A stretch of DNA of 64,000 nucleotides from Styela clava (lineage: Eukaryota), in contig NC_135257.1 in the NCBI RefSeq assembly GCF_964204865.1, positions 17,112,001 through 17,176,000 of the forward strand, read 5' to 3'. Each line of letters begins with the position of its first letter. The first letter of the stretch is position 1. The position numbers and the translations under genes are program-made. A model generated the notes under the pieces. The model was not told the origin of the DNA, made no database searches, and worked only from the letters and a program-made list of their open reading frames with translations. Below, in pieces: positions 9,130-41,814 of this stretch.

Positions 9130-9242
9130 GGCCGCTCCAGAAGTATGTGTACCAAGAGGACGCACAACCTGATAACCCTAACCTAGTACACATACTATGT
9201 TCAGGTTGTGCGCCATATTGGTACACATACTTCGGAAGTACC
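9130..9242. mobile_element. Palindromic GG..CC MITE (paralogous copy at ~35168-35260)
   Basis: Hairpin CTCCAGAAGTATGTGTACCAA...TTGGTACACATACTTCGGAAG, same family as the copies at 44029-53078. Confidence 0.8.
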
Positions 9243-10373: not shown

Positions 10374-10678
10374 TACTTATCGATTTTAATTTGTCTGTTT
10401 GTCTGTCTGTCTGTTGGATGCACGCGATATCTCACGAAAGCGAGATTGAATCTGCTCCAGATTTTGTATGTGCATTCACCATATGTCGGACCAGAAGCCT
10501 ATTGATTTTGTATAATTAGCGTATAATTTGTATAATAATTCGTATAATTGTCGTATAATTAGCGAGTTATTGATTAATTAGTGATGGGACACAAAGTGCC
10601 ATTATGGAGTAAGAGCGCTGTTTTGGGGATCCCCTAACTTTCGATCGATAAGTCTTCGGTCTCTGACCGATATTCTCG
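10374..10678 (+). mobile_element. Helentron-associated non-autonomous element (HINE/DINE-1-like)
   Basis: Subterminal inverted repeat ACTTATCGAT...ATCGATAAGT, (GTCT)n tract, 3' stem-loop TCGGTCTCTGACCGA, T-rich target without TSD. Absent at the paralogous site near 36386. Confidence 0.8.
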
Positions 10679-13493: not shown

Positions 13494-16400
13494 CTATTTT
13501 TCACAAATGACGCCGTGAAATTTGCTTGTAGGTGGATCGTTTCCCATTCCTTGTCTGCTGGATGATGGGTCAGTTTGAACGTGGATATACAAACCTGATT
13601 CTCCTGCGTTCGGAAATCCACCAGTCCACCACTTGACATACGACGCCCTTGTTCCGTCTCGCATGAGTACTGCATTCGTCTGTTTAATACAGATTTTAAA
13701 GTATGACAAATGATTTAATTTAGAAATCCTATCCATAAGATGTAATTTAACATTAGAATCGTTCCAAATGCCAATAATAAAAAAAATTTAACATAAAATT
13801 TATTACATCGTGTTGCGGAAAATGTTCGTGGTAAGCTACTTACTGATATATCGACTTGCATGCCTGTCCAAATAAACGTATCTGCCGATATTTTTCTGCG
13901 AATATCAGCCATCAGGTCGTTCAGATGTTGCTCGTTATAAACATTTGCAGGAAGCCCATTGTTTACTCCACAAATTCTTTTCGCTTCATCCACATTGATA
14001 TCCTTAGATGAATGCACTACTGACCAGAAGCAATGACCTAGATATTGTACGGGACAAAGTCCTGTAGAAAAACAATGCAAAATTTTCCGTTAAACTTTCC
14101 GTTTTTCTAGCATTGGAGACTTAAGAATAAATCAGGCAACGTCAACTACTAGAGTTTGGTCGCTTGAATGACATAACATGTGGATCCTAATACTGCTTTG
14201 GCCACTTATAATAACTCTACTAATTCTGTTCGTTTCACTTTTAGCTTAAGGTTTGTGATTTAGTTTTTAAATAAATTAAAAGTGTTAAACGTTTTCATAC
14301 AGACAAATACAAATAAACACTAATATTATATTAAATCATTTATCTCTCTATAACGCAGAAACTTGTTTATTTATAAGATCGTTCAATCTGTTAATGATAG
14401 TCTTTGTGCATATTTTATAATAAACGTTGATGATTGTCATTATAGGTTTATTTCTCTTGTGTTGATTACTGTTACGAAATAAATCCACAGATACTTCGTC
14501 AGAAATAACTTTTTTTGATAGTGTACCTTGTAACTTCAGCTGCCTGTGAGGATCGGAAACAGTTCTATTCATTTTTCGAATCATTTCTTCCATTTTATTT
14601 ATTCTTCCAACCAATCCCGTGTTCACTTTATTGCATTCTGTAAAGTAAGATGAAATCTTTTACACGACCCAGCCTACTAACTAAACACATATTATATTGT
14701 AATTTAACCAGAAAACAAGTAGGCTACATGCGTATCAAAGAAATATAAAAGACATCGCTGGAGTGTGCATTCTAGTGGCAATAGAGCTGACATAATCTCA
14801 AGTTTAAGATACTGGTCACACCACATTCCAATAAAATGAGAGACATTTGTGCAAACTTTTGTTCAAAGAAAAGGCTCGAAAAACGTTTATCGGCACAAGC
14901 TGTATCATAGATTAACCGAAACTAGGCTTCGAACATTGGGACTTGTCGTATTATCCTAATTTCTATAGTGTATTGATTATTACTTGAAGACCTATAGATG
15001 CTTAATTCCCATTGTTACTTATCGATCTTAAGATCGGTAAGTATTTTGATGGGTATTATTACTTATCGATCTTAAGATCGGTAAGTATGTTGATAGGTAT
15101 TTTTACTTATCGATCTTAAGATCGGTAAATATGTTGATAGGTATTTATCCGTCTGTATGTCTGTGTGTTAGATGCACGCGATATCTCACGAAAGCGAGGT
15201 TGAATCTGCTCCAAATTTTGCATGTGCATTCATCATAGCTCGGATCAGATGCCTATTGATTTTGGATGGATTATGTCTTATAATTAGCGAGGTATTAATT
15301 AATTATTTATGGGACACACGGTGTTACTATGGAATAAGACCACTGTTTTGGGAGATCCCCTAACCTTCGATTGATAAGTCTTCGGTTTCTAACCGATATT
15401 CTAGTTATTTTCTTAAGATGATAATTATGGCCTAATATAAGTAACTCACCGATCGTTTGTTGCATGAAGGATATGTTCTTCGCAACTTGTTCTCCGGAAT
15501 TCTTAATCAAGCCGATCAAGTTTTTCTGACAATTTACTGTTATTGAAAACAAACGTTAAATGGTTAGTTTGTGAAATCTGACATAAGTAAAGTGTCTTAT
15601 GCGGATTAAAGACGCCGGTAGTCGCTGAGACAGTGGCGTATCTAGGGTGTGGCAGCCATGGGCTCGGTTTGGATATGGGCGCAAAATGAACGAAAAGTTT
15701 TAATCGTATAAAAGTCAAATTTGAATTAAACAAAACTCGTATTTTCACTTAAATAATACCGTATAAATATCCCAATTAAACAACAGTCGTTAAAAATTGT
15801 CAGCCAACGATCAAGGCGGCGCCTTCGGCATTGGCATTGGCGCCACGTAGATACGCCACTGCGCTGAGGATAAGAATAGGCCATGTCTGCGAATGGGTGC
15901 AATTTATTTATTTGCATAGATATTTCGAAGCCATTTAGATGATTTTTTTCCTATTTATCAAATAAAACATACATATTACGTCATTTGCAATTCGAGCGCT
16001 TTTCTTATGTTTACTATAGATTCGATATGATTGTCTTACCTCGTTTATCATCTAAATCTGCTAAATTCTTTGCAATCGTTTCGTATCTTTGAGACAATCG
16101 TTGAATGTTATTCATGGCCTGACTTTGAATGCGATCGAGTAGTTGCTTTGAGGAATTCATTTCCTTCTTTTGTTCGCTGGTGATGTTTTGCAAGATCATG
16201 ATTTCTAAACATTATAATATCGGAATTTTTTATGAATGGATAATCGCTTAACATAATATAGAATAAGATTTTTTTTTTGTGTGTACCCGACCAGGGTTAG
16301 GGCATAATTTTATTTCGATTTTCTTTATTTTAGGTGTATTACGAGTTTGAGGACTGTCTGTGTTAGTCAAGTGAATATGCCCCCTGCCCATAGGTTTCAG

Positions 16401-18912
16401 TCCCTTTACACAACTTGATGTAAAGTAGGTGAAAAAAATTAGTTACCTCTATATTGGTACACATACTACTGGAGCGCCGAATTTTATATTTAACCCGGAC
16501 AGAGGAAAGGCGGTTCAATCATATAGATTTTTGTTTCAGTACTATTAAAGAGTACTTTAGCGGAAAAAATAAACTCCGCTGACTTTCGCAGAGGACAATA
16601 AACACCCAATATCTGTGATGCCAAATGTTCCAATATTGTAGAGTTGCACAATTGAATTTCGCTTAATTGTAATTAATTGAAATACACCTAAATTCCTAAT
16701 AACGATTAGAATCCAAATTGAGATTATCAAAGAAATACAGTCCTTTTACAATTTCAATTTTGTTATGAAGTCGGTTCTCAATATATTTTAAAGCAGGTTT
16801 TTTGTTTTATAATCAGTAATTGTTTAAGCGAGGGTCAAAACAATATATGGTATCGATATATTCCCTTCGCACTTTTAAGAATTTTTCAAAGACTTCATGG
16901 ACATCATAATATATACAATCATCAGAGAACGCAGGAACGCGTTTTGAAACTCTCCGGGGCAGGAATTTTAGACAAACAGTGGTAATCGAAGTAGGAATTC
17001 AAATGAGATTCTAAGCAATCACAATCAAAGGAGCTCGCACACGCTAAATGGTGGTTTAGTTTTAGTTTTCTTGGATTTAGAAGATCGAAGTTTTTAAAGG
17101 ACTAAGATTTTGAAGTCAAGTGTGATTTTCCAGACCGTTTATCCGTGTTTTAAAATAAACGACTCTAGATCTTCGGGCGGGCTATATTTTTCACATTTTT
17201 CAGGGATTACTAAGAGCCATCTTTGTGGGATCATACTAACGCATATAGTGGAAATAGGCGCAATATAAGCTAACCTTCGTTTGAATCTTCAAGTTTAGTT
17301 GTCGCCTGTGCAAAAAAAAAATAAGATTCACTATGTTTTGTTTCGAGTCTTTGTTTATGAACTTGAGTAATTGGCTGTAAATTAAAGAAGGATTTGCTTA
17401 TTGAAACAGCAAATTGAACTTTAGGCAAAATATTTTCAATTTCGTGAGGTCACACATCAATAGGAGTTACTACAGTCAGCAGCTTACTCCGAAAATAAGA
17501 ACGTTAGAATGATTCTAAACGAAAAGCATTTTTATTCCATTTACATATTAATAAAAGTAAAATATACAAATTTTAAACAGGGAATATACAAGTATGGAAA
17601 TTCTTTGTAGTTGGGAAGTTTCTATTATACGTATCTGCTGACTTACTTCAACGTATTACAAACTCTATATTGTGACGTCACCATGCGGATATCGCAAGAT
17701 TTAGATTTCAATATCTATTTACAGCACGGTCTTCCCCATCGACATTGTTTTAGCTTTTATGCTAGCTTGACAAAAATAACTCAATTCTACCAAGTTGCAA
17801 CAACGAAACAAGTTAAATATTATTAAAATAATAATAGTGATACCTGAACCAAGAAGATAGTGATGCATATAAGACAAACAAATAACAGCGACATAAGAAT
17901 CAAGAATCCCACGGTTTTCCCAATATTCGATCTTTTTCCACTTGATTTAATTTCCTTACTCTCGGCAACGGCAACTGTACCTAAAAAGATTGGGGAAATT
18001 AACACTAGCAAATCAAAGTTTCGCAGCACCTGTGATTTTAAACACTGAATTTCCCATCTTGCCCTTTATATGAAGTGGAATCTAGAGTCTGTAAGTTTTA
18101 TTTCCAATTTTTGATTGATATCTGGGTTATTTTAGATATGTTTTATTAGAGGCTTGTGTGAGATGTGTAGTGTGAAATCACAATTTTGATACAGGTAAAC
18201 TTACACCAATTCCACACCCCACGGGTGTGCAACCTTTAATACAGCCGGGCCAGATACAAATGACTAGGTGGAAAGGCGGGTCGAACCTCTATTTGAGGTA
18301 AGATTTCTAGTAGTTGCAAGAACAAAATAACATTGTAATGTCATAGGCTTAGATATTAGAAAGACTTTGCAACGCAAAAAGATTGGAATTGCTCGCGGGC
18401 CGCAGACTATTCAAAATTGGCACTCAATATGCGGACCGGACATTTTTTTTTGGGGGCCGCATTTGGCCGCGGGTTGCAGGTTGCGCATCTCTCTAATAAT
18501 AAACAAATGAGCAATGCTCATATGTACGGACACTAAGGTCGTGTTTCAGTAGGGGGAAAATTTTAAAGAAAGCATCGGACCATGGGACTCTGATGAGAAA
18601 ATTAAAAAAAAAATAAGTAGCAGCTTTTTAGCGGCTCCTTCCATCTTTAAACACTAAAAATTTAAAATTAGACCATCATTAGCGACCCAAACAACCACAA
18701 CAACAAGATTTAAAAAAAAAAACGATTCAAATGTACACGTGTCCAATAACGATTTTACCTGTTTCAATATTTCCTTCCATTTGTATAACACGAGGGAGGG
18801 AGTTTTCGTAAATAGGATCTTGGACTGGTTCGTCTTGTTGTTGAGACCCAATCGCCATATTTTCAATCCCAGCATTTGGATGAAATCTGACTATCGGACA
18901 TTCGTAAGCCAT
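13494..18912 (-). CDS. Type II transmembrane C-type lectin-like receptor (~362 aa, 8 coding exons)
   Basis: GT-AG exons, all frame-compatible: 18912-18759, 17980-17844, 17305-17275, 16204-16040, 15536-15450, 14637-14527, 14061-13844, 13679-13494 (1089 nt). Encodes a cytoplasmic tail with DPIYENS, TM helix VGFLILMSLLFVCLICITIFLV, coiled-coil neck and CTLD (CPVQYLGHCFW..EAKRIC..IWTG..VICEK*). Confidence 0.85.
15015..15405 (+). mobile_element. HINE/DINE-1-like element with triplicated 5' end
   Basis: Same core as 10374-10678 (GATGCACGCGATATCTCACGAAAGCGAG); three tandem ~44-bp copies of TTACTTATCGATCTTAAGATCGGTAA...; 3' hairpin TCGGTTTCTAACCGA. Confidence 0.8.
15631..15861. mobile_element. hAT MITE
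   Basis: TIR CAGTGGCGTATCTA / TAGATACGCCACTG; TSD CGCTGAGA / CGCTGAGG. Confidence 0.88.
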
Positions 18913-21194
18913 AGCTATTATTTCCTATTTGTTGTCCTTCGCAAATAGAGGTATATGAAAGTTGAAAGTTAATTTTTTTTTTCTTATTATATATATATAT
19001 CATAAGAACTTCGCAATGAATGCATTTCGTTCGGTGCAAGTATTTATCACACTTTAAATAGGTTAGCACATTTAGTATCCAGCATATCGCTCAAATATTG
19101 ATTTCAAAATATTGAATTGATTTGTTCTGAAGAAGGGTTATTACTGGAGTGGCAGTCGTTTTTTTCGAACTCGTTGCAATCAAAATTTTGGGATTTGTTG
19201 AGTCGAATCTTCAGAATTTTGAGTGTGATAATTGAATCAAAATTCCCTACGGAGGCTCGAGAAAAAATTTAGTTTACTGAACGTTCTTCAGTCTATTATG
19301 GAAAGTCTGAATACGCCAAAGTTTTTGTCATCAAGATTTGATTTTATCGGTAGTTCGGAGCTGGAGTCACAATTACTATCAAATTCGAGTTCGGTTCAAA
19401 TTTATTTCAACCCGGAGTCTATTGTCAATTTTAACCGTCTCCATATTCTGACTCCAAATCCCAAGCAATAGGGCAATATTCAGATAGATAGACACAAAGG
19501 CCAAAACGAATTAATACGGGTTTAAATTCTTTCACAGTATCGTGTACGGAATCGCGGTCTTCGCGACTTCAACTGACCACATCGCAATGAGCGCGAACGC
19601 GGAACCGCCACAAGTTGCGCAATTTTTAATATGATGACATCATCACATACAAACTAACAAATCCGAAGAGCTCACAGAAATTTTTAAAATAAATAAAAGT
19701 AATAGTCTTCTAGCGATAACAACAATCTTTCACCACTGAAAATTACAAAGCAATTGGTCCAGGAATTTGAGAAAGAGGCGATTTCCCCACAACAACAAGA
19801 AAACGAATATAATTAAACTGCAATAACGTAATACTAAAACGATCTATACTTTCATCTTGTGTCCAATAAACGATGAAACCTCCTCGAAGCAAACATTCAC
19901 AAACTGATTCAACGTTTCATACTATTGTTGGACGAATTTGACATTTCCCTAACCTGACATTCCTGCTATCGGTCTATAGGGCGTATAGTTCACCATATTG
20001 TTGGGACGTCTTATTGTCTTTCTGCTCGTGATATTCATATACACCTCCTCTTTAACGTAAACTCAAACTCATTTTATATTTATTGAGAAACCGTTAAAAG
20101 TTACATGAAATTCAATATCGTTAACTCAATATAGTTTCTGAGATTTTTGTCAAATGCCTGATTAATTTTAAGTAAGAATTCACGCAAAGGGATTTTCAGC
20201 CAAATAATTTTGAGGCATACGACTCAGGCATATCTCAAGTCATCAGCGAGAACCTTGTCCATTCATTTTCAAAATTGCGCTTTTCTAAATAACTAATAGA
20301 CCTAGATATTACATGTCGTGTAAGACTGACTTGAATCGTCTCAGTCACAAATGCACAATTGAATCGATGACAAAGTGAAAATCAAATTACGTCCATGTCA
20401 CTGCGATCAGTTTTGGTCGATCAGCATAAATATAACGAACTAGATTCAATGAATAGCCTTTTCTTGAATGATGAATGATTCATATGTTCCAATATACAGG
20501 AAACTAAATTTTATAAACGACGATTTGCTTTACATATAACCTTACGTATCACCCGTCGCTTGAATATGGCGTGAAAGCAACACCAAAATGCCACATGCAA
20601 ACCTAGTATATTTACAAAAATTTTATCACAAATGTCTAAATTAGCATTCATTTAATTTATAAATCATCTCTGCCTTATTATTTTTTGCGTGTGTTCCTTT
20701 TTTGCGACATTGGTTTGCGCAGTTGGAAGCCTGTCAGTTTAAACATTCCTGATCTCGGGCTTCGTCGTTTAAATCTGGTCATGCCTGTGAGACTCCGTTT
20801 CGCACTCGAATTGAAACTGCTTACCAATCAAAAGAATCGTCTCAACCGTAGCTAAGAATACGTTGTGATAGCAACACCAAAAGCTGATTTTAATAATTGC
20901 ACAACTTTTCAAATGTTACCTGATTTTGAAACATGCGTCTCGCCTAAAATTTCTTGTCGCGCATTCACAGCGGGTTGGACCACCTCGATAGGGTTGGTAA
21001 CGTGCCATACATATACTGCCAAGAATATGCATATAGCGCCAACTGAATATTCATATACCGTCAATGTTATATACATATACAGCCAATTAATATCCAAATA
21101 CAGCCATTTTGGTGATTTACAATTACTGCCAAGTCATATGCATATATAGCCGAATCAATATATAAATAAAACAATCAAAATAAGATAGATTTAC

Positions 21195-21486
21195 CTATTT
21201 ATACCGGGAGAGAAGAAAGCCGAACCACGGCCGCTCGTCCGGTTACCATTTCATGTCGGGTATGGGATTAGCTAGGTATTTGTTTTCGGAAGCATGGACT
21301 TGATGGTGGAGGAAGCTGTAACCGTCAAGCGGTTACTTGAACCACCCTACGGCAGCAAGGAGACCAGAAATTTATTCGCACACAACCCTCCCCGCATGGG
21401 ATTCAAAACTGCGAACCCACGCAGATTAATCAGATTTGCGGTGGCGAGCGTATTCCTAACGCTTAGTACGATGAGTCACACCGCGT
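21195..21486 (-). mobile_element. tRNA-derived SINE (related partial copy at ~61655-61880)
   Basis: Minus strand starts GCGGTGTGACTCATCGTACTAAGCG (A-box-like) then GGGTTCGCAGTTTTGAATCCC (B-box-like); shared core GGGATTCAAA.CTGCGAACCCACGC at ~61810. Confidence 0.7.
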
Positions 21487-21859
21487 AAACTGCCAGTGTT
21501 AATATCATAATATATACCCCACAACAGCTGGTCATTGATTACACAAGAAATGTGCTGGCTGAAAATCGCTCTTCAGTGAACTATTCTTTGGCTAATGACA
21601 ATAAACTATTCACCAACTAATCGAATTAAAGCTTGGTGGAAAATGAAAAATATAAAACTGCCAATGTGCGTAGTTCTTGAGAAATATCCAATATGCACCA
21701 ACTTAGTTCTTCGGAGATATTCAATAAGCGCCAAATCAAGAAATATGCTGCATAAAAATCTATTTTTGAGGAACTATTTTTTGGCTATTGGCAATAAACT
21801 GTCCACAAAATAATCAAATAAACGCATGGTAGGAAATATAAACATAAAACTGCCAGTGC

Positions 21860-23409
21860 GCTAGTTCTTGAGAAATATCCAATAGGCGCCAAGTTAGTTC
21901 TCTTGAGAAATATCCAATAGGCGCCAACTCAGTTCTTCAGAAATATCCAATAGGCGCCAACTTGGTTCTTCAGAAATATCCAATAGGCGCCAACTTGAAT
22001 CTTCAGAAATATCCAATAGGCGCCAACTTAGTTCTTCAGAAATATCCAATAGGTGCCTACTTGGTTCTTCAGAAATATCCAATAGGCACCAACTTAGTTC
22101 TTCAGAAATATCCAATAGGCGCCAACTCAGTTCTTAAGAAATATCCAATAGGCGCCAACTTAGTTCTTAAGAAATATCCAATAGGCACCAACTTAGTTCT
22201 TCAGAAATATCCAATAGGCGACAACTCAGTTCTTAAGAAATATCCAATAGGCGACAACTCAGTTCTTAAGAAATATCCAATAGGCGCCAACTCAGTTCTT
22301 AAGAAATATCCAATAGGCGACAACTCAGTTCTAAAGAAATATCCAATAGGCACCAACTCAGTTCTTAAGAAATATTCAATAGGCGACAACTTAGTTCTTA
22401 AGAAATATCCAATAGGCGCCAACGTGATTCTTCAGAAATATCCAATAAGCGCCAACTTAGTTCTTCAGAAATATCCAATAGTCACCAACTTAGTTCTCCA
22501 GAAATATCCAATATGCGCAAACTTAGTTTTTCAGAAATATCTAACAGGCGCCAACTTAATTCTTCAGAAATATCCAATAGGCGCCCACTTGGTTCTTCAG
22601 AAATATCCAATAGGCGCCAACTTGGTTCTTCAGAAATATCCAATAGGCGCCAACTTGGTTCTTCAGAAATATCCAATAGGCGCCAACTCAGTTCTTAAGA
22701 AATATCCAATAAGCGCCAACTTGATTCTTCAAAAATATCCAATAAGCGCCAACTCAGTTCTTCAGAAATATCCAATAGGCGCCAACTTAGTTCTCCTGAA
22801 ATATCCAATAAGCGCAAACTTAGTTCTTCAGAAATATCCAATAGGCGCCAAATTGGTTCTTCAAAAATATCCAATAGGCGCCAACTTAGTTCTTCTGAAA
22901 TATCCAATAGGCGCCAACTTGGTTCTTCAGAAATATCCAATAGGCGCCAACTTAGTTCTTCAGAAATATCCAATAAGCGCCAACTCAGTTCTTAAGAAAT
23001 ATCCAATAGGCGCCAACTTAGTTCTCCTGAAATATCCAATAGCCGCCAACTTAGTTCTCCTGAAATATCCAATAAGCGCAAACTTAGTTCTTCAGAAATA
23101 TCCAATAGGCGCCAACTTGGTTCTTCAGAAATATCCAATAAGCGCCAACTCAGTTCTTCAGAAATATCCAATAGGCGCCAACTTAGTTCTCCTGAAATAT
23201 CCAACAAGCGCAAACTTAGTTCTTCAGAAATATCCAATAGGCGCCAACTTGGTTCTTCAGAAATATCTAATAGGCGCCAACTCAGTTCTTAGGAAATATC
23301 CAATAGGCGCCAACCTGGTTCTTCAGAAATATCCAATAGGCGCCAACCTGGTTCTTCAGAAATATCCAATAGGCGCCAATTTAGTTCTTAAGAAATATCC
23401 AATAGGCGC
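21860..23409. repeat. 30-bp tandem satellite, left part (~51 units)
   Basis: Consensus GAAATATCCAATAGGCGCCAACTTAGTTCTTCA-type repeat with 30-bp period. Confidence 0.97.
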
Positions 23410-30556: not shown

Positions 30557-31735
30557 TCTTGGTTCATACAGAAATATGCAATAGGCTCCAACCTATGATG
30601 TCACAGTGCTCCACAACAGCTGATCGTTGATAATACGAGAAATGTGATAGCTGAAAATCTTATTTGAAAGAACTATTCTTCGGCTATTGGCAATAATCTG
30701 TCCACAAAATAATTAAATTAACGTTCGGTGGAATATATGAAACATAAAACTGTCTGTGCGCGTATTTCTTGATAAATATCCAATAAGCGCCAATCTATGA
30801 TGTCATAGTACCCCACAACAGATTATCTTGGATAGCGTGAGAAATGTGTTGCTGAAAATCTTTTTTTGGTGAATCGTGCTTTGGCTATTGACAATAAACT
30901 GCATAGAAATTAACCAAATTAACGTTTGGTCGAAACTATCATAGCTCACTATGCAGTTTGTTTAATTCAAGACAAATCGTCATTGTATTTAGTAGGATGA
31001 GACTACTACCGTTACGCGTACAGAAACTCGAAAACAACTTTTGATTAAAACATGAGAAATGACTTATAACAAGCGTAAAGTATAAGGATAAAAATATCCT
31101 AATATGAGCAGCATATAACATAAGACATAAAACTGCCGGTGAGGAGTTTTTGAGAAATATCCAATAGGCCCCAACTCAACTCTTCAGAAATATCCAATAG
31201 GCGCCAATCTATAATGCCATAGTGCTCCACAACAGCTGATCGTTGATAATACGAGAAATGTGATGGCTGAAAATCTTATTTGAAAGAACTATTCTTCGGC
31301 TATTGGCAATAACTGTCCACAAAATAATCAAATTAACGTTTGGTGGAATATATAAAACATAAAACTGCCTGTGCGCGTAGATCTCGATGAATATTCAATA
31401 GGCGCCAATCTATGATGTGATAGTGCTCCACAACAGCTGATCGTTAATAATACGAGAAATGTGAGGGCTGGAAATATTATTTGAAAGAACTATTCCACGT
31501 TTATTAGCAATAATCTGCCAAAAAAATAATCAAATTAACGTTTTGTGGAATATATGAAACATAAAACTGCCTGCGCGCGTAGTTCTCGATGAATATCCAA
31601 TAGGCGCCAATCTATGATGTCATAGTTCCCCACAACAGCTGATCGTTGATAATACAAGAAATGCGATGGCCAAAAATCTTATTTGAAAAAACTTTTTTTT
31701 GGCTATTGGCAATAATCTGTCCACAAAATGATCAA
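30557..31735. repeat. ~200-bp tandem repeat (further copies at 21495-21860)
   Basis: CCACAACAGCTGATCGTTGATAATAC-type motif recurs near 30610, 30813, 31227, 31428 and 31630; each unit contains one satellite-like monomer. Confidence 0.88.
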
Positions 31736-31741
31736 AAAAAT

Positions 31742-31915
31742 CATGCATCAGTGTATAACAGTCTTTTATCGAGTAAATATCCTGAAATCGTGCAGCTATG
31801 TGGGACCAATAGTGATAGTATCACAATTGAAGTGATGGCTGTTCAACAGCAGCGAGGAAATGAACGTGGGTACTTCGCTATAGTCAATGCCCTGGATCCC
31901 TGTATACTGACGTAT
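31742..31915 (+). pseudogene. Ulp1-like (peptidase C48) cysteine protease remnant
   Basis: VYNSL...IEVMAVQQQRGNERGYFAIVNALDP resembles the VYDSL...QQ..g.DCG.FAIA..DP consensus. Catalytic Asp and Cys would be lost by single transitions (GAC>AAC, TGT>CGT); the catalytic His segment is absent. Confidence 0.65.
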
Positions 31916-32069
31916 TGCAATAAATTTAATGAAGGGCTCGAAATGGCATTCATTCAATATGATATTGACGTTTGTTGGAGTCACATTAAACCTTATTCGG
32001 TTGAAGATTAAAAAAGAATGGAGAAATTGAGAACTTGGAAGATGTCATATTATTCCACCATGAACACCG

Positions 32070-32473
32070 ATGGTACTGTCAATCTACAATAGCATCCGTG
32101 ACCTATTTCCAAATACAACCTTGCCCACTGGTGACAACAAAATTAGAAGTGTTCCAAATGAAACATATTGCAAATTAAGCGGAAACACATCCAAAATTTC
32201 GACGGGCGGTACGTATAAAATCTACCTGGACAAATTCATAATTTTAATTTTGAAGCCGGATAAGCTTGATATTTCATTATTCTTTCACACGATTATGCAT
32301 AAAATGGCCCATGTCATGGTGCCGATAGAAACAGCCAGTCAAGCACATGCAAAAGAATTATAAAAATGTGGAATATTCATTCTAAGGCTTTTTAAATTGC
32401 ATCGAAAAATGTCACCTGAGCAGTGGCAGTGTTTTCCAGTAATTGACAAGTCAATTCTTAATAAGTCAGTATG
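32070..32473 (+). pseudogene. SprT-like zinc metalloprotease remnant
   Basis: LSIYNSIRDLFPNTTLP...HTIMHKMAHVMV......AHAKEL*KCG fits the SprT pattern (F...LP; TllHEMaH; H-G-x-x-F). HEXXH Glu>Lys by GAA>AAA; in-frame stop at 32361-32363. Confidence 0.6.
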
Positions 32474-32623
32474 ATGGAATATTTAATATTTTCACATGTA
32501 ATGAAAATACCTTTATCGAACTCAAGTTACAAGTACAAGCTAACAATTAAAATGTGTAACTATACAATCTTGCTGGCATTTATTTCGTAGTATATAATGT
32601 TGTGCCATTTTAATGCTCTAAAA

Positions 32624-32997
32624 CTGCGGTTCCCAAACTATGGGTCACGACTCACTGGTGGGTCGCAAGGGTAATCTCAGTGGGTCGTGAAAAGATGTAG
32701 AAAGCTTTGATCAATTATACTGGTTATTGGGATCGGTGGCAAAGCAAATTTCAAAATAAACTGCAGCTTTTCAAGTTTTTACGTCTAAAACTATATGACA
32801 TTGAAATAAATGTCAAGTCTATTATGGAAAATAGCAAGAAACAATTTCATCTTTTTCACTAGCTTCACTGAAAATTCAATTTGAGAAATTAAATTTGTTT
32901 CCTCCAATGTCTTGTTAATTTGTTAAAGTTAATAGGGTCGCCATAAGCTGTGGTAAAAAATAGTGGGTCCCAACTCTAAAAAGTTTGGGAACCACTG
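32624..32997 (+). mobile_element. Internally deleted copy of the hAT-Buster/Charlie element at 147-729
   Basis: Same ends and body; TSD CTCTAAAA / CTCCAAAG. Confidence 0.88.
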
Positions 32998-35900
32998 CTC
33001 CAAAGTCTAAAATATTATCTTATTTCTTTACAACAGGAGTTTTCGAATGGTGCGACACGGCGCACTGACGAGTCATTTTAATTTTGCTTCGCACAAATAT
33101 TTAATAGTCATACTTTACTGACTGTAGGTATGCATATTTAAATAAACTTACATAACTGTAGTCAATAATTACTGATCAAATCAAACCACAATGTTACTTT
33201 CTGAGTTCAAGATTAGTTCAATTTAGTGATACCGAAAAATTTGTGAATATTCAGCTTGTACCAAAAATGATACAAACGGTTTGTCCAAGAGCTTAACAAT
33301 GCTAAGTAATCACGTCTCATAAAGCTAACCAAACTTGATTTGCAGTGTTTCTCTTACGTAAAGTCTTACCGCTGAATGATGTTCAGATCATGGAATGATG
33401 TTCATATCATTTTTATATCTACTTTACGCTAGTTGCCAGTCATTTTTTTATATTGTTGGTTGGTTATACTGTTGGTTGTGATTATTTTTAATGGATAATA
33501 CACTTTTGTGGTTTATTGTTTTTATAATTAAATTACACATGAAGGGGCACAAAAGTCTTCAGTGCTTAGGGCACCAAAGGGGCTTAATCCGCCCCTGACA
33601 AGACACAATGAAAACGTATCGAACGCGCCACTCTCAGCCCCTTTATCCACGAATAAGACACATGCATTAATCAGCTTCTTCTTTATACACTTGGCAAAGA
33701 ACAGCGATTTTCTTAAATGAATAAAACACAATTGATCAACTTGCATATATATTCCGATCCGGGTGGCTAATACAATTACGATATATAACAGATAAGTAAA
33801 CAGTCCACAATACGGACAAATATCTGCGGCTCTTACACAATGAATACGTGATGCGAAAATGACCGAAAAAAAAAACGCTTAACAAGACAACAGATAAAAT
33901 TACTAATTTACGCTACAAGCAAAGGAAAAAAAAGGTAATAATGGGTCGACAATGATTGGTTACACGCAGCGCACGATGCACTGTATACAGAGGCAAAATG
34001 TAGGATAAAATTGTAAACAACGTACCACGAGAAGCTGACATTGTACGCTTCGAACAAATAACATGTTACTTGTCACTAGAGACTAAATGATGCTAATATC
34101 TCAATATATAATATGACATATATTTTATACTTATCGTAAGTAACTGCAACAAAAGTCGTTTTGGAGTTTCTGAGAGGTATTTTCAAAACCCTAACCCTAA
34201 CACACTTATTATATCATATGTATATCTAATTGGCTGTACATGCATATGACTTGGCAGTATTTGTACATCACCAAAATGGCTGTATTTGGATGTTAATTGG
34301 CTGTATATGGATATGACCTTGGCTCTATATAAATATTTAGTTGGCGCTATATGTATATTTAGTTGGCGCTATATGTATATTTTATGCTGTATATGTATAT
34401 CACGTTACCAACCCACTCGATCATCTTGCCAATGCAGACTAAAAAGTTTGCCGTAGCTTAGAGTTCAGCAAAAAATTAGGGTTGTGGCAGGACAAATATA
34501 GTTACATTTAAATAAAAAAAATTCTGAGCAAATATCACTAACCGGCCTACCGACTCATCGGGTCATCCCCATCTCAGAGTTAAGTAATGCTTGCCATCTT
34601 ATTGATTTACAATGGTTAGTTTAGTACTACACATTGCTAAGACATCATCTCCATCAAAACTAACAAACTTTTCGATTTTTCACCTTCTGATTTCTTTCTC
34701 AAGATTGTTCTCCAAAATTTCTTGTTTAAACTTTTCGAAAATATTATTTTGATGTGAAGTGTACAAACCGTGATTACTGAATTCCTTACAATACATTCTT
34801 TTCCAATCTCAAATGGACGCAATTATGTTGTTATAATGTCTCTAACCAAATGTAATCGTAGATACTTAATGCAATGAACTGGATATCGTTATTAAACATT
34901 TTGAATTACTGACATTTTAAGTATGCATGGTGCATTTATTAGCTATTCTTTGAAATTAATCAATTTTTTTCCTGGTACTCAAGCCTATATTTCCAACTTG
35001 TTGTTTATCAGTCTATCATAATTCATCGCTCCCTTTTAAAAGGATTTGAAGCTGGGTAACATACGAAGCCTTCCAAAGTGCTTCGCCGTCTCGTACGTGT
35101 ACCGAGTATATCCAGGTACAGACACTGCAGTGACGGAAATAAACAAAATGTGCGAGACGCACGGACAGGACCGCTCCAGAAGTATGTGTATCAAAATGAC
35201 GCACAACCTGATAACTGTTCAGGTTGTGCGCCATTTTGGTACACATACATCGGGAGTACCCAGACATGAGCTAAGATTTAAAAGTAGAACGAAATAAGGG
35301 AACGAAAACCTGGCAAGATAACTTAAAATAAATTAGACAAACAATACCTCCACGCCTGTGATCTAGTCCAGATTGATAATAGCATACTTTGAACTAACCC
35401 AGAAACGTGCCCAAACGTTATCGGGTATATTGAATAGGAATCGTTGCTATTGTCATATACAGTGAACTACAAGCATAATTTTTATAGCGAACTTTACTGC
35501 TGTGTGAACTATAAATAATGAATTCATACATAACTCCAAGTATGCGTCTATAACTGGCAATGGCTGAACTGGAAAACCCAATCTGGCTTTGGTATGAATT
35601 TATAATATCTATAACAGAAATAAACAAATAATATAAATAAATCACCTATAACGGTAATGGTATTTAAAAAGGCAGAAGGCGTATGGCAGAACTTAAACTG
35701 GATTTGCTTACACACATAGCAATTATAATATAGCCCATTTTGTAGAATGAGGTCCTAAAATGACAGGGGTGAGTAAATAAAACGAATTAATTGCTTATAA
35801 CGGAAATTATTCACTTTCTTGAGACAATAAACTGCAAGGAATAAAAAGGAATACTAAGGATTTGCCTGCATACATGGAAATACGTAGCCCAAGAGTGGGT

Positions 35901-38840
35901 TCCAACTAGCGATTGGTGTTAAACTGATTTTACTGGCTCAGATCGGGATCTTCTTTTTCGAATCACTTTCAAATCGAAAATTTTGACCGTATATATATCC
36001 AAGTGTATAATGACTGTATAAAAATGTATATATCCAAATAGTTTTTATGTGGATTTTTCAATTATTGAAATCGATATTTCTTCTTAAGTCGTTCAAATTT
36101 TCTCCGACCATGATTGTAAACTTCATATTCATGTCGCAAAAGTGAATTCTTTAAATTATCAATTGAGGTTTGAGATTGAATACCTTTCCGCCTAGTATCT
36201 GTCTCCTTCCGCCATCTTTTACCACTTCGCTTATATTATTTTAATGCTTCAGTGAAATAATTTAAAAGCATTTTTTCAAATAACTGTAATGTATTTTCAA
36301 ATTCTTTTGTTAGTCCAATTGCTTAGTAATGGCAATGGGTTTCTCAGATACGAAGTGAACATACTTTTCGTTTTGCAAAATTGTTGTTTTATTTGTTATT
36401 ACTTAATAATTAAAGAGATACAAAAAACTGATTTACAAACCTATGTTAAGGGCTTTTCTTCAAATTTTAGCTAAGCTGGAATGCTTTATATAAACTATAT
36501 TTTATTATTTTTTTTTATTTAAATTGAATCAACTAAACAAATTTTCAAATTAATTCGTGGTACAAGGTTCATTGGTTTTGAGAAAGGAGATTGGATTTAA
36601 AATTTCTTGAATGTTTCTCAATCAAACACATCTGGCATTTACATCAAAGCCATGAGCAAAGTAACAAACACTATTTTTGAATCCATCTGAAATATGAAAA
36701 TAAAAAATAACAAAATAGTATTTCTACAAAATCTGTACGCACTCTGTAGTACTAAGGTTTTGGCAAGGGGGTTATGAGACCATCGCTAAGTCGAAGAATT
36801 GTTTGATATAATTCTTATCTTAGCGATAGGACTCATTATTTCATTCTGTTTTGGTTTATTGAAAACATTATTTGTAGTTCAGATATCTACGAATAGTTTA
36901 ATCCGACAATAGAACATGTCGATCCCTCAATCACTGTTCGAGCCTATTTCTGACCAAAGCGTAGTAATGATCTGTAACCAGTAAGACCATCTGTATATAG
37001 TAGTCTATGAGCATCTCCCATCGGTGGCTTCTTGCACATGACTTTATGCGGAGCAATGTGAAATAAATAGAATCGCCATTTGAGTAAACTGACATCCAAT
37101 TTGTCTTATTGCGCAAAATTTTGCAATTTCCAGTTCGTTCTTAACATTCGTCGGGCAAACTTATATCTATAGACGTAACTTATCGCGTCTAAAAACCCAA
37201 TTAGTGGGTTGGATGTGGATGTGATAGTGGTTTGGCGCTGGATGTGATGGCACTAAATCGTAATCTTACTCAAAACCTCAACCAGTTTTGTGTTTCTATT
37301 AGGTCATATATAGGAGCCATAGCCGAAAAGATTTGAATAAACATTTAAATAAAATCTCTTTCGTTCCGTCTGGCGGATTACGCTTGCACATACAGTCTTG
37401 TGAAATATTTCTTTTTAGATAATTCCATTTTCCCAGGACTGAAAAATGCTTAAACCTACTCTCAAGAAATTTGGTGGTTGCTTGCTTACTTACGACCTTG
37501 TTCGAAAATCCCAGTACCAGTGTAAATCAATATTTAATAATCAGTATTTTGATGATCGAAGACTAAGGACCAATGAACATCTCACTCAGAGCTTGGTTCG
37601 GTAAACCAGGGAAATCCAATCCATAACATATAATGACTTAAACAACTTAGTGAATGCTGAGTGGACGAAGTGTACATGACTTCGTTTAAAAACGAAGTAA
37701 ACCTCTTCCGGCTCATAAATGTAGTAGTAGCCTGAAAATTCTTTGGTGCTACTTTGGTATGCGATCAAACGCATAGTAATCTTTTCTCAAGTTTATTAGA
37801 TTCTATTGCGTTACGCAATGCGTCAGTATTGGAACGAATAATTACTATCCAACATTTGCTCAATTTTCTGGAATTCTTAAAGACTAAAAAGCCACGCATG
37901 GCAAAACCCCAATCAAAAAAATATATTGCTATGTGACATAATATACATATATATGTGTTATGTTATATTAATAACATGCAAAATTTAATCAAAGAGTAAA
38001 AGCTCGGAGAATATATATACAAGCATTCAGCAATAGCAATATCACATAAGTGTTATTAAATCAATGTAATTAGTTGTAAGTTTATAGCGGAGTTTTACGC
38101 CTGATAGGCCGTGATTGGTATTGCAATGTTTAAGAACTAATTTTAATAAAATCGGACGTAAATTTGTTCACCAAGTTTAAGTCTCGTTTAACCTTTCTTT
38201 TATTAGATTGATTTGATTTGATATTAACTTGCTGCATTTATTTTACAAATTATTTCAATCCCGGTCATTTCATTTTCTATTTCAACCCTATCAACCGAAA
38301 GAAATTTTATAGAAAGTTGCAAACGAATTTCTTTGTATATTTACAAATTGGCAGAGAGCAAAACAAATATATGTTTTTTTACAAGTGCCTACTTGTAATC
38401 ATTGTTAAGGCCAAAAATCTAAAACAAATTGGAAGCATTTTTATGAAAATATCAACTGTTGAAAGCGTCATGTTATATATAACATGCAATACATTTATGT
38501 CACATATACTTGTCACATTTGCCAATATTAGGTTTCTCACTATCACAGGAAACCTTTTTCAATACTCCGATTGTGTGAGAAGAAAGTAAAGAAGGATTTT
38601 CACAAATATACCAAGAATGATGAATTCGGTAAAAAAGGTTTATTCATCTGGCGGAGCAAGGATGTCTTCCGGTCATCAGTATAGATATGTTGTGGGAATA
38701 GTGAGCCAGCTTTCCACGCGATATAATCGGGAATGGCAACTTATCGTCAAAACTAAGTGAAACAGTGTTAAAATGTGTTTCACCAAATACAGAATTTGAA
38801 ATATAATTCAAACATAAGGACATCTTGAATACATTGAATT

Positions 38841-41814
38841 CTATTTTTCACAAATGACGCCGTGAAATTTGCTTGTAGGTGGATCGTTTCCCATTCCTTG
38901 TCTGCTGGATGATGGGTCAGTTTGAACGTGGATATACAAACCTGATTCTCCTGCGTTCGGAAATCCACCAGTCCACCACTTGACATACGACGCCCTTGTT
39001 CCGTCTCGCATGAGTACTGCATTCGTCTGTTTAATACAGATTTTAAAGTATGACAAATGATTTAATTTAGAAATCCTATCCATAAGATGTAATTTAACAT
39101 TAGAATCGTTCCAAATTCCAATAATAAAAAAAATTTAACATAAAATTTATTACATCGTGTTGCGGAAAATGTTCGTGGTAAGCTACTTACTGATATATCG
39201 ACTTGCATGCCTGTCCAGATAAACGTATCTGCCGATATTTTTCTGCGAATATCAGCCATCAGGTCGTTCAGATGTTGCTCGTTATAAACATTTGCAGGAA
39301 GCCCATTGTTTACTCCACAAATTCTTTTCGCTTCATCCACATTGATATCCTTAGATGAATGCACTACTGACCAGAAGCAATGACCTAGATATTGTACGGG
39401 ACAAAGTCCTGTAGAAAAACAATGCAAAATTTTCCGTTAAACTTTCCGTTTTTCTAGCATTGGAGACTTAAGAATAAATCAGGCAACGTCAACTACTAGA
39501 GTTTGGTCGCTTGAATGACATAACATGTGGATCCTAATACTGCTTTGGCCACTTATAATAACTCTACTAATTCTGTTCGTTTCACTTTTAGCTTAAGGTT
39601 TGTGATTTAGTTTTTAAATAAATTAAAAGTGTTAAACGTTTTCATACAGACAAATACAAATAAACACTAATATTATATTAAATCATTTATCTCTCTATAA
39701 CGCAGAAACTTGTTTATTTATAAGATCGTTCAATCTGTTAATGATAGTCTTTGTGCATATTTTATAATAAACGTTGATGATTGTCATTATAGGTTTATTT
39801 CTCTTGTGTTGATTACTGTTACGAAATAAATCCACAGATACTTCGTCAGAAATAGCTTTTTTTGATAGTTTACCTTGTAACTTCAGCTGCCTGTGAGGAT
39901 CGGAAACAGTTCTATTCATTTTTCGAATCATTTCTTCCATTTTATTTATTCTTCCAACCAATCCCGTGTTCACTTTATTGCATTCTGTAAAGTAAGATGA
40001 AATCTTTTACACGACCCAGCCTACTAACTAAACACATATTATATTGTAATTTAACCAGAAAACAAGTAGGCTACATGCGTATCAAAGAAATATAAAAGAC
40101 ATCGCTGGAGTGTGCATTCTAGTGGCAATAGAGCTGACATAATCTCAAGTTTAAGATACTGGTCACACCACATTCCAATAAAATGAGAGACATTTGTGCA
40201 AACTTTTGTTCAAAGAAAAGGCTCGAAAAACGTTTATCGGCACAAGCTGTATCATAGATTAACCGAAACTAGGCTTCGAAAATTGGGACTTGTCGTATTA
40301 TCCTAATTTCTATGATTTATTGATATTATTTCGAAAAAAATAAATAGAGGTTCCCATTGTTTTCATATTTGGCATAATTTCGACACAAAATTATGGAAAA
40401 ATACCGTAAACACGACTTCTCGACAACGTTAAATTATCAAACAATTTCAATGAATTTTTTATTCGAATTCGACTGCACTCTTGCCACACGATGAAGATGT
40501 CTGTTTGTTTGTTGTATACTGATAAAAGCAAATAATCTTAATTATAACCTGAATATTCCATTCAAAAAAGTTTTTTATTTTTTTTCTCTGGAACACCGGT
40601 TATCAGGCTTAGATTAGATTTTGTCCATATTATTCTGAAACTTACCGATTTCGACATTTTCTTGAATTGCTCGGTTTATTCTTCTATAATCAACTTCTCC
40701 GGACGATCCCTTTAATCCTGCTGGGCCAACATCGCCTTTGGCGCCTCGTTTTCCTGGTCTAGAAGAATACGGATTTCTGAAATATAAATGTAATCAACCA
40801 GTGTGAATCAACAGTAAATTTAGATTTTGTAAAATGCATTATGGCTAATTAAAGTAACCTATATTTCAATATATTATTTTATATTTCAGTAATTTTTTTA
40901 AAATTTTAGTTAGGGAAAGCAATAGAATATAATATATATATATAAATATCCTGGTATCGTCCGAAAATCGGTGTTTCCATAACGAGTCACGTATGTCAAG
41001 ACCTGTTTTATTTGTATTTTTATGCGGTGTTTTCATGTCTAAGATGATTTTCGCCGAACAAATAATCCTTTCTACGCAGACACGGAATGGTTTAGAAGAA
41101 TGGAAACAATTTATTGCACCTCTGGTGAGTTGGTGTATTGCAGGACATGGAAATTGAGATCCTATAGTTTTATCTCTCATGAATTTCGGTCGATTGGATT
41201 ACCGCTTATTAGACTGTAAGGCACTGAACCGCCCAAGGACTACTAGGCAGTGGTGGGATTCAGCCGGTTCCCACCGGTTCTATAGAACCGTCTCACGGAA
41301 TTTTATAAGATTAGAGAACCGGTTAGCATTACTGGTTTATTTGCTAAAAAAAAAGATGATTTTTGAAACAGAACCGGCTGAAAAATATGACTTTTGTGAT
41401 GGAACAGGCTGACAAAAAATTTGAATCCCACCACTGCTTCTAGGGTGTCTCTAGTCTAACTCTAAATCATTATAATCGCAACCATAATCATAAGATGGTA
41501 ACATATATCTTACCTTGTACGTTCAATCACAGATTCTTCTTCTTTGACATTTATGGCTTCCAGTTGTTCCAGTTAGCCCTTAGATTAGACTCTAGGACAC
41601 TGAACCATTCAGAAGGTACTACGATGTTTCAAACACAAATGATCACCATAATATTACAACTAATTCCTTACCTTGTTCTTCCAATCCAAGATTGTACTTC
41701 TTCGTTATGTATGTCTTCAAGTTGCATGCAGATGCGTTGTTGATTCACTCCATTTGCCATGCAAGCGACAAACAAGGCGAAGAAGAGCAGTTGAACAATT
41801 TTCATCGAAGCCAT
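38841..41814 (-). CDS. Secreted collectin-like protein (signal peptide, 7 Gly-X-Y, neck, CTLD; ~262 aa, 5 coding exons)
   Basis: GT-AG exons 41814-41672, 40776-40646, 39984-39874, 39408-39191, 39026-38841 (789 nt, open frame). Signal MASMKIVQLLFFALFVACMANG; collagen-like GKRGAKGDVGPAGLKGSSGEV; neck+CTLD identical to the gene at 13494. Confidence 0.9.
41248..41436. mobile_element. hAT MITE in collectin intron
   Basis: TIR CAGTGGTGGGATTCA / TGAATCCCACCACTG; TSD CTACTAGG / CTTCTAGG. Confidence 0.9.

What the first reader, a model, noticed from the sequence alone, without database searches (positions are those of the whole stretch)
13494..41814. Paired membrane receptor and secreted collectin with an identical recognition domain
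Seen: two neighbouring genes have unrelated 5' exons. One encodes cytoplasmic tail + TM + long coiled coil; the other encodes signal peptide + 7 Gly-X-Y. Both splice in phase 1 (both donors ATCG|GT) onto three exons encoding the same ~170-aa neck+CTLD, with only one synonymous difference seen. Known: collectins act as soluble opsonins and type II CTLD proteins as cell-surface receptors, normally with distinct CTLDs. Inferred: this is a two-component system with a soluble sensor/decoy and a signalling receptor of matched specificity, possibly hetero-oligomerising through the shared neck. The order (collagen exons, block 2, TM exons, block 1) also fits an ancestral two-promoter locus whose shared 3' exons were duplicated.
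Basis: partly seen in the sequence, partly recalled or inferred. Interest (0 to 1): 0.85.

Follow-up and report, generated by a model that had tools for sequence, protein, structure and literature searches.

The report
Chimeric membrane lectin converted by neighbouring collectin
In the sea squirt Styela clava, a secreted collectin-like lectin gene and a neighbouring membrane lectin gene share an identical binding domain in this assembly, but that identity comes from a very recent copy-over (gene conversion) seen only in this assembly, in a membrane gene patched together from two older genes.

Summary
On the minus strand lie two Styela clava genes that NCBI annotates as uncharacterized. LOC120345958 encodes a signal peptide, 7 Gly-X-Y, a neck and a C-type lectin domain (262 aa). 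LOC120346062 encodes a tail, a membrane anchor, a coiled coil and the same neck and lectin domain (362 aa). Their last 171 residues are 171/171 identical, with one synonymous exon difference.

- The membrane gene is a young chimera. Its 5' half (15405-20547) is an 87-93% copy of the 5' half of a scavenger-receptor (SRCR) gene on contig C19. Its 3' half (8360-14988) copies the neighbouring collectin-like gene.
- The identity is a 1.8 kb conversion tract (13142-14933, 4 differences) between ~90-97% identical sequence on one side and the end of homology on the other.
- It is not fixed. In the earlier RefSeq annotation the membrane gene's module is only 135/171 identical to the collectin module, and an RNA contig splices that diverged neck exon onto the membrane-gene exons.

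So this is not a conserved matched sensor/receptor design or an ancestral two-promoter locus. It parallels vertebrate SRCL/CL-P1 and conversion-homogenised paired lectin receptors. The same scan separately noted the conversion tract on this window.

The parts
41672..41814 (-). Collectin-like gene LOC120345958, exon 1: ATG, signal peptide, N-terminal Cys; donor in phase 2
   Evidence: (identical to NCBI model P0044)
40646..40776 (-). Collectin-like gene, exon 2: 7 Gly-X-Y triplets and the start of the helix; donor ATCG|GT in phase 1
   Evidence: (Pfam Collagen 20.3 bits, below cut-off)
38841..39984 (-). Block 2: neck exon 39984-39874 and lectin-domain exons 39408-39191 and 39026-38841 (with stop) of the collectin-like gene; the inferred donor of the conversion
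18759..18912 (-). Membrane gene LOC120346062, exon 1: cytoplasmic tail. NCBI start is at 18912; a second in-frame ATG is at 18858
   Evidence: (joint 17980|18759)
17844..17980 (-). Membrane-anchor exon (19-residue hydropathy 3.17; 4 K/R on the N-terminal side, which fits type II orientation)
17275..17305 (-).
   Evidence: (joints 16204|17275 and 17305|17844 in three runs)
16040..16204 (-). Coiled-coil exon 1
   Evidence: (Matrilin_ccoil E 2e-4, below cut-off)
15450..15536 (-). Coiled-coil exon 2; donor ATCG|GT in phase 1
   Evidence: joint 15536|16040 in three runs; contig X2 #10 joins 15450 to 14637
13494..14637 (-). Block 1: neck exon 14637-14527 and lectin-domain exons 14061-13844 and 13679-13494 (with stop) of the membrane gene
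13142..14933 (.). Conversion tract: 1792 bp with only 4 differences from 38489-40280
8360..14988 (.). 3' duplication, copy 1 (partner 34420-40335). Outside the tract, BLAST pieces are 87-92% identical and 500-column windows 90-97% (mismatches only). It ends 351 bp upstream of the neck exon
34420..40335 (.). 3' duplication, copy 2 (the collectin-like gene's last intron end, three exons and about 4.4 kb of downstream flank)
15405..20547 (.). 5' duplication: 87-93% identical to G000:C19, about 14126678-14132173, which is the 5' half and upstream region of the SRCR gene LOC120334494
14989..15404 (.). Junction of the two parental segments inside the chimeric intron: a 44-bp tandem repeat (15011-15146) and a dispersed repeat that also lies inverted at 43024-43247

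Best explanation
Two real, expressed Styela clava genes sit 25 kb apart.

- LOC120345958 encodes a secreted collectin-like lectin: signal peptide, N-terminal Cys, 7 Gly-X-Y, helical neck and a divergent C-type lectin domain. It belongs to a Styela family of at least 20 such genes.
- LOC120346062 encodes a type II membrane protein with a coiled-coil stalk and the same neck plus lectin domain.

The membrane gene is a young chimera. Its promoter region, tail, anchor and coiled-coil exons were duplicated from an SRCR-ending, scavenger-receptor-like gene now on contig C19. Its last three exons and 3' flank were duplicated from the neighbouring collectin-like gene. The two segments join in an intron at a repeat, and phase-1 exon borders keep the frame.

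In the haplotype assembled here, a 1.8 kb interlocus gene conversion (collectin gene to membrane gene) then overwrote the membrane gene's own, diverged lectin exons. That gives 171/171 identity. Other individuals carry the unconverted membrane allele (79% identical module).

Inferred, not shown: the secreted form acts as a soluble, oligomeric recognition or opsonin molecule, and the membrane form as a cell-surface, probably endocytic, receptor. In the converted haplotype the two would have the same binding specificity.
For: - Gene models and splicing. They are identical to NCBI models P0044 and P0042.
- Topology.
- Lectin fold with neck: the AF2 model has pLDDT 94-98 over most of the lectin domain. 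Foldseek top hits are tetranectin, SP-A, MBP, CD23, SP-D and CL-K1, with 482 hits at E<=0.001. The family profile hits solved C-type lectin domains, including SP-A at 1.5e-5 and SRCL/CL-P1 at 2e-4.
- Chimera: the anchor and coiled-coil exons have exactly one other copy in the genome, on C19 (98% and 87% amino-acid identity). DNA identity is 87-93% over window 15405-20547. That gene's product P0045 ends in an SRCR domain (Pfam E 2.4e-29).
- 3' duplication and identity profile: flanks are 90-97% identical in 500-column windows, and three successive windows over 13253-14752 are 99.6-100%.
- Not fixed, and direction of conversion: the old annotation's collectin P0041 is 166/171 identical to the window module, but the old membrane protein P0003 (same gene ID) is only 135/171.
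- RNA contig X2 #10 joins all the membrane-gene exons to a neck exon with 7 differences. Three of them recode exactly to P0003's residues: E18G, M19I and K22E.
- In run X5 the membrane-gene 5' exons are covered, but no contig at >=95% likeness lies on its three lectin-module exons.
- No P0003-type lectin exon exists anywhere in this assembly.
- The secreted short-collagen architecture is the common one among paralogs.
Against: - The allelic comparison therefore rests on protein models plus one RNA contig.
- No RNA contig shows the converted (window-type) neck exon joined to 15450.
An assembly error in block 1 is therefore not formally excluded.
- Which of the C9 and C19 genes is the parent of the 5' half is inferred by parsimony, not rooted.
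- The protein tree of the module was unresolved.
- Function, oligomeric state and ligand are untested.
Confidence: 0.8

Rival explanations
1. One reading: this is a selected two-component system. A soluble sensor or decoy and a signalling receptor are kept at matched specificity, possibly forming mixed oligomers through the shared neck.
For: - The modules are 171/171 identical in this assembly, with intact frames and splice sites in both genes.
- Both genes have contigs in the same two RNA runs, X1 and X2.
- Conversion-maintained paired lectin receptors exist in vertebrates: Siglec-5/14 (PMC4042635) and Siglec-11/16 (PMC5701461).
Against: - The identity is absent from the previous reference (135/171) and from the membrane-gene transcript seen in RNA.
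- Run X5 has the membrane gene's 5' exons without any window-type lectin exons.
- The tail has no ITAM/ITIM-type tyrosine motif.
- No evidence bears on mixed oligomers.
Confidence: 0.1
2. Assembly artefact: block 1 in this assembly was wrongly filled with or polished to block 2 sequence, and the true membrane gene carries the diverged (P0003-type) exons.
For: - No RNA contig supports the window-type neck exon joined to 15450.
- P0003-type exons are absent from the whole assembly.
Against: - The two copies still differ at 4 sites inside the tract and at 3-10% in 5 kb of adjacent flank, so the assembler kept the loci apart.
- The tract ends inside homologous sequence, as conversion tracts do.
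- The RNA runs come from other studies and probably other individuals, so their lack of the converted form says little.
Confidence: 0.07
3. Ancestral two-promoter locus: one gene with alternative collagen and membrane 5' exons sharing its 3' exons, later resolved by duplication of those 3' exons.
For: - The gene order (collagen exons, block 2, membrane exons, block 1) fits.
- Both 5' parts end with the same ATCG|GT phase-1 donor.
Against: - The membrane 5' exons plus upstream DNA are a ~91% duplicate of an SRCR gene on another contig, with homology ending 45 bp into the intron.
- None of the other paralogous loci examined (two clusters on C9 and one locus on C1) has membrane-type exons.
- The duplication carries about 4.4 kb of 3' flank, and a repeat marks the junction.
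Confidence: 0.03

Closest known systems
Vertebrate collectins (MBL, SP-A, SP-D, CL-K1) and tetranectin
   Same: - Signal peptide, N-terminal Cys, Gly-X-Y stretch, helical neck and C-terminal C-type lectin fold.
- The best structural matches are the neck plus lectin-domain fragments of tetranectin, SP-A, MBP, SP-D and CL-K1.
- Collectin-like proteins are known from Styela plicata and Ciona (reviewed in PMC5465252).
   Different: - There are only 7 Gly-X-Y triplets, and Pfam Collagen and Lectin_C both score below their cut-offs.
- The sugar/Ca motif reads FPN ... E ... GND instead of EPN/QPD ... WND.
- The inner disulfide of the lectin domain is absent (reading of the sequence).
- Sugar binding is therefore not assured.
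SRCL / CL-P1 (SCARA4, COLEC12), the class A scavenger receptor that ends in a C-type lectin domain
   Same: [quoted passage not shown]
- It is related to receptors that end in an SRCR domain instead. PMC3567963 proposes a domain swap between SRCR and lectin ends for the vertebrate family.
- Here the swap is visible at DNA level.
   Different: - The membrane gene has no collagenous region.
- Its origin is independent and recent (about 91% DNA identity to the SRCR parent within Styela), so it is an analogue, not an orthologue.
Paired lectin receptors homogenised by gene conversion (Siglec-5/14, Siglec-11/16)
   Same: Neighbouring genes with unrelated 'other ends' have ligand-binding exons made near-identical by a short conversion tract (PMC4042635, PMC5701461).
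   Different: - The pair here is secreted versus membrane-bound, not activating versus inhibitory.
- The domain is a C-type lectin fold rather than an Ig fold.
- The conversion was seen in one haplotype only, so there is no evidence that it recurs or is maintained.
Type II coiled-coil C-type lectin receptors (CD23, langerin, DC-SIGN)
   Same: Tail, anchor, coiled-coil neck and a single lectin domain; CD23 lectin domains are among the top fold matches.
   Different: No sequence kinship beyond the fold. The stalk here comes from an SRCR receptor gene.

Membership tests
Collectin | Secretory signal peptide and N-terminal Cys-containing segment | tested here: met
   Hydrophobic N-terminus (residues 1-19) followed by Cys29. 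No dedicated signal-peptide predictor was available.
Collectin | Collagen-like Gly-X-Y region | tested here: inconclusive
   There are 7 uninterrupted triplets. Pfam Collagen scores 15.7-20.3 bits against a cut-off of 27.2. This is far shorter than in vertebrate collectins (own knowledge).
Collectin | Alpha-helical neck followed by a C-type lectin fold | tested here: met
   The AF2 model has helices at 78-117 and 121-130, then a domain with pLDDT 94-98 in most 10-residue blocks. Foldseek finds neck plus lectin fragments of tetranectin, SP-A, MBP, SP-D and CL-K1. The family profile hits solved lectin domains. Pfam Lectin_C scores 19.8 bits against a cut-off of 22.6.
Collectin | Canonical Ca-dependent sugar site (EPN or QPD, plus WND) | tested here: not met
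   The sequence reads FPN ... GES ... GND, and these positions vary among paralogs (FPQ, YPD, FPG). The assignment is by motif spacing, not by a structural superposition.
Collectin | Trimer formed through the neck | not testable with these tools
   No usable computational result; it needs SEC-MALS or cross-linking.
Class A scavenger receptor, SRCL/CL-P1 type | Type II membrane anchor with an N-terminal cytoplasmic tail | tested here: met
   19-residue hydropathy of 3.17 at residues 78-96 of P0042; net charge +4 on the N-terminal side and -3 on the C-terminal side.
Class A scavenger receptor, SRCL/CL-P1 type | Extracellular coiled coil | tested here: inconclusive
   Weak Matrilin_ccoil match (E 2e-4, below cut-off) on exon 16204-16040. 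The exons are heptad-like and helix-rich by eye. No structure was predicted for this part.
Class A scavenger receptor, SRCL/CL-P1 type | Collagenous region (at least 70 aa in the definition used by PMC3567963) | tested here: not met
   The membrane protein has no Gly-X-Y run.
Class A scavenger receptor, SRCL/CL-P1 type | Shared descent of the stalk with SRCR-ending receptors | tested here: met
   The 5' half is 87-93% identical in DNA to LOC120334494, whose product ends in an SRCR domain. Orthology to vertebrate SCARA genes was not tested.
Conversion-homogenised paired receptors (Siglec-5/14 type) | Near-identical binding-domain exons inside a sharply bounded tract, with older divergence beside it | tested here: met
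   4 differences in 1792 bp, against 3-10% divergence in the flank.
Conversion-homogenised paired receptors (Siglec-5/14 type) | Homogeneity kept across individuals or species | tested here: not met
   In the older annotation the module is 135/171 identical, and an RNA contig carries the diverged neck exon.
Conversion-homogenised paired receptors (Siglec-5/14 type) | Opposing signalling tails | tested here: not met
   One partner is secreted, and the other has no ITAM/ITIM-type motif.

The most novel reading that the evidence does not exclude
The membrane receptor gene is polymorphic for its whole recognition domain. One allele carries its own diverged lectin domain; the other carries the neighbouring secreted lectin's domain, copied in by gene conversion. 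Selection would keep both alleles in the population, as a way to vary and to match innate recognition between a soluble opsonin and a cell-surface receptor in an invertebrate chordate.
Probability: 0.2. Interest if true: 0.65.

Novelty: new variant of a known kind. Interest (0 to 1): 0.45.

Why it matters
- It gives a dated, DNA-level example of how a membrane lectin receptor can be built by exon shuffling. A scavenger-receptor front end is joined to a collectin back end at phase-1 exon borders. The same swap has been proposed, but not seen in the making, for vertebrate SRCL/CL-P1.
- It shows interlocus gene conversion replacing an entire recognition domain in one haplotype of a tunicate immune-type gene. 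That yields two very different alleles (79% identity), which can be genotyped and assayed.
- It warns that 'identical domains' in a single reference genome need not reflect a conserved functional design.

Tried and rejected
- Pfam on single exons gave no Lectin_C hit. Only full-length database proteins gave sub-threshold hits, so I relied on fold and profile searches.
- Complex prediction on three copies of the neck plus lectin module (P0044 residues 78-262) returned no verdict. It is not used as evidence either way.
The older assembly's locus and transcript contigs could not be fetched, and no DNA-level dN/dS between the two membrane-gene alleles was possible.
- A maximum-likelihood tree of the module was unresolved and is not used.
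- Reads were laid on the membrane gene. It rests on NCBI's model being identical to mine and on contig X2 #9: a perfect neck exon plus 303 letters lying elsewhere, which fits collagen exon plus exon 1 by length only.
- The two-promoter origin was rejected (see rival explanations).
- I looked for ITAM/ITIM-type motifs in the tail and found none.
Exons were searched by reference, and full-length searches used the database proteins P0042 and P0044. A local script showed that P0044 equals the spliced translation and that P0042 equals it plus 18 N-terminal residues.


Full report
**What is in the sequence**

The window is G000:C9:17112001-17176000. The organism is Styela clava, as shown by the names of the matching NCBI proteins. 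Both genes lie on the minus strand.

The collectin-like gene has these coding exons:
- 41814-41672 (ATG, hydrophobic leader, Cys)
- 40776-40646 (seven Gly-X-Y, then the start of a helix; donor ATCG|GT, phase 1)
- 39984-39874, 39408-39191 and 39026-38841

The membrane gene has these exons:
- 18912 (or 18858)-18759
- 17980-17844 (membrane anchor)
- 17305-17275 (31-nt mini-exon)
- 16204-16040 and 15536-15450 (donor ATCG|GT, phase 1)
- 14637-14527, 14061-13844 and 13679-13494

All introns are GT-AG and both frames are open, giving 262 aa and 344/362 aa. It is needed to link a phase-0 donor to a phase-1 acceptor.

A local script showed that my spliced translations match NCBI's current models. XP_077971396.1 (P0044) is identical, and XP_077971797.1 (P0042) is identical apart from 18 extra N-terminal residues. 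Exons were searched by reference, and full-length work used these database proteins.

**Expression and splicing**

RNA-type contigs from four runs in three studies were laid on 13400-19000. They give these joints: 13679|13844, 14061|14527, 15536|16040, 16204|17275, 17305|17844 and 17980|18759.

One 696-nt contig (X2 #10) runs from exon 1 through every membrane-gene exon into the neck exon, so it joins 15450 to 14637. A second contig (X2 #9) carries a perfect neck exon preceded by 303 letters that lie elsewhere. By length that fits collagen exon plus exon 1.

**The shared module**

The last 171 residues are 171/171 identical. The only exon difference is 13871/39218, ATT versus ATC.

Pfam does not recognise single exons and gives only sub-threshold Lectin_C hits on full proteins (19.8 bits against 22.6). 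Three other results establish the fold:
- A family alignment gave an AlphaFold model with pLDDT 94-98 in most 10-residue blocks of the C-terminal domain and a long helix before it.
- Foldseek found 482 PDB matches at E<=0.001. They are led by tetranectin, SP-A neck plus lectin domain, the MBP trimer fragment, CD23, SP-D and CL-K1.
- The family profile hits solved C-type lectin domains by sequence, including SP-A and SRCL/CL-P1.

So the module is a neck plus C-type lectin fold. By my reading of the motif spacing, the sugar/Ca site reads FPN ... E ... GND rather than EPN/QPD ... WND, and the inner disulfide is missing. Paralogs vary at these positions. Sugar binding is therefore possible but not assured.

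**The family**

Exon B has at least 150 lectin-exon relatives in the genome. Close paralogs lie 16.5 kb left of the window, in a second cluster 1 Mb away on C9, and on C1. The annotated relatives are nearly all S. clava proteins of 230-280 aa. Many have a signal peptide, 7-10 Gly-X-Y, a helix and this lectin domain. Some are named 'collectin-46-like' or 'surfactant protein A-like'. The secreted short-collagen form is thus the common architecture. The membrane form is a one-off.

**Origin of the membrane gene**

Self-comparison shows that 8360-14988 duplicates 34420-40335. That stretch is the last 351 bp of the intron, the three exons and about 4.4 kb of 3' flank.

The anchor and coiled-coil exons have exactly one other copy in the genome, on contig C19 (98% and 87% amino-acid identity). 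At DNA level, window 15405-20547 is 87-93% identical to C19 around 14.127-14.132 Mb. The homology stops 45 bp after exon 15536-15450.

The C19 gene (LOC120334494, P0045) has the same tail, anchor, mini-exon and coiled coil, but ends in an SRCR domain (Pfam E 2.4e-29). It is therefore a scavenger-receptor-like type II protein.

Between the two parental segments (14989-15404) lie a 44-bp tandem repeat and a dispersed repeat. The membrane gene is therefore a chimera: an SRCR-receptor front end joined to a collectin back end, with the frame kept by phase-1 exon borders.

Both duplications show similar divergence, about 7-10%. That the C19 gene is the parent of the 5' half is a parsimony argument. 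The lectin module's usual partner is the collagen exon, so the membrane-lectin combination is the derived one.

**Why the modules are identical**

Identity along the 3' duplication is 90-97% in 500-column windows, but 99.6-100% in three successive windows over 13253-14752. Between 13142 and 14933 there are only four differences, while 11 differences fall in the 108 bp just outside. This is the pattern of an interlocus gene conversion.

The identity is not a property of the species:
- The previous RefSeq annotation, made on another assembly (protein versions .1 against .2), gives LOC120345958 a module 166/171 identical to the window's. It gives LOC120346062 (P0003) a module only 135/171 identical.
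- RNA contig X2 #10 shows seven differences in the neck exon. The three listed ones (14575, 14582, 14586) recode exactly to P0003's residues E18G, M19I and K22E. So the diverged allele is a real transcript of this gene.
- In run X5 the membrane-gene 5' exons are covered, yet no contig of 95% likeness or more lies on its three lectin-module exons.
- No P0003-type lectin exon exists anywhere in this assembly.

The collectin gene carries the window-type module in both assemblies. The membrane gene was therefore the acceptor of the conversion.

**How it most likely works**

Shown:
- One product is secreted and one is type II membrane-bound.
- Both end in a neck plus lectin fold.
- Both genes are transcribed.

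Inferred from the families named above:
- The secreted protein is a soluble, probably oligomeric, recognition or opsonin molecule.
- The membrane protein is a cell-surface receptor of the SRCL/CD23 kind, probably endocytic. Its tail has no ITAM/ITIM-type motif but has a Tyr-x-Asn motif, which is kept in the C19 paralog.

In the converted haplotype both would bind the same ligands. In the unconverted haplotype they would probably not, because 36 of 171 residues differ.

Whether matching is advantageous is unknown. For comparison, the module of the window's collectin gene and that of the paralog P0002 differ with dN 0.14, dS 0.40 and ratio 0.35. That points to ordinary purifying selection with fairly fast change.

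**Comparison with what is known**

- The secreted gene is collectin-like, but it fails the canonical sugar motif and has a minimal collagen stretch. Collectin-like proteins of Styela plicata and Ciona are described (PMC5465252).
- The membrane gene works like SRCL/CL-P1. Whelan et al. (PMC3567963) proposed an SRCR-to-lectin domain swap for that receptor's history. Here the swap is recent, independent and readable in the DNA.
- Conversion between neighbouring lectin receptor genes is known for Siglec-5/14 and Siglec-11/16 (PMC4042635, PMC5701461). Here the conversion is between a secreted and a membrane gene and is seen in one haplotype only.
- I found no paper on these two genes.

**Limits**

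An assembly error in block 1 keeps about 7% in my estimate. The four differences inside the tract and the well-separated flanks speak against it.
- The trimer prediction gave no verdict and is not used.

**Verdict**

The architecture is right. Matched specificity is true only for this haplotype and arose by conversion. The two-promoter origin is wrong.
- It is a new variant of known kinds (chimeric lectin receptor; conversion-homogenised lectin pair), of moderate interest.

Noticed in passing
window 1723-2577 (-): An intron-less 284-aa ORF with a full-length TANGO2 domain (Pfam E 2.3e-54).
   Followed up: partly
window 41514-41563 (-), donor GT at 41513-41512: A partial tandem copy of the 3' end of collectin exon 1, with its own GT donor. 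It reads LEAINVKEEESVIERTR. That is closer to the old-assembly allele P0041 and to paralog P0002 than the exon actually used in this assembly, which suggests structural polymorphism at exon 1.
   Followed up: partly
window 21862-23409 and 28650-30592: Two 33-bp minisatellite arrays (47 and 59 copies, 89% matches). They lie inside the 13.4 kb element that another note of the scan places at 20990-34415, and that element separates the two lectin genes.
   Followed up: no
G000:C19, about 14126100-14130310 (loci L029/L030): The SRCR parent gene LOC120334494 has a tandemly duplicated coiled-coil exon. It also has an annotated isoform (P0046) that skips the anchor and mini-exon, and so would not be membrane-bound.
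   Followed up: partly
G000:C9:17092179-17095776 (+) and C9:18120000-18151200: There are further paralogs of the collectin-like gene. One lies 16.5 kb left of the window; its collagen exon carries a TGA, and it is annotated only as the 150-aa P0043. A second cluster of three lies 1 Mb away; one of them has a TGA in exon B.
   Followed up: partly
window 40618-40788 against C9:18128809-18128979: The collagen exon is 94.7% identical in DNA between the window's collectin gene and the paralog P0002, while their lectin exons are 77-87% identical. This means either stronger constraint or a separate conversion of the collagen exon.
   Followed up: no
window 15083-15269 and 16205-16950: Intronic repeats covered by RNA contigs at summed depths of thousands, so they are dispersed, transcribed repeat families. 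One also lies inverted at 43024-43247 and twice on C19.
   Followed up: no
P0042 residues 33-38; P0045 residues 33-38: A Tyr-x-Asn motif in the cytoplasmic tail (PIYENS / PIYVNT) is kept in both the chimeric gene and its SRCR parent. It may be an SH2-docking or sorting signal; this was not tested.
   Followed up: no
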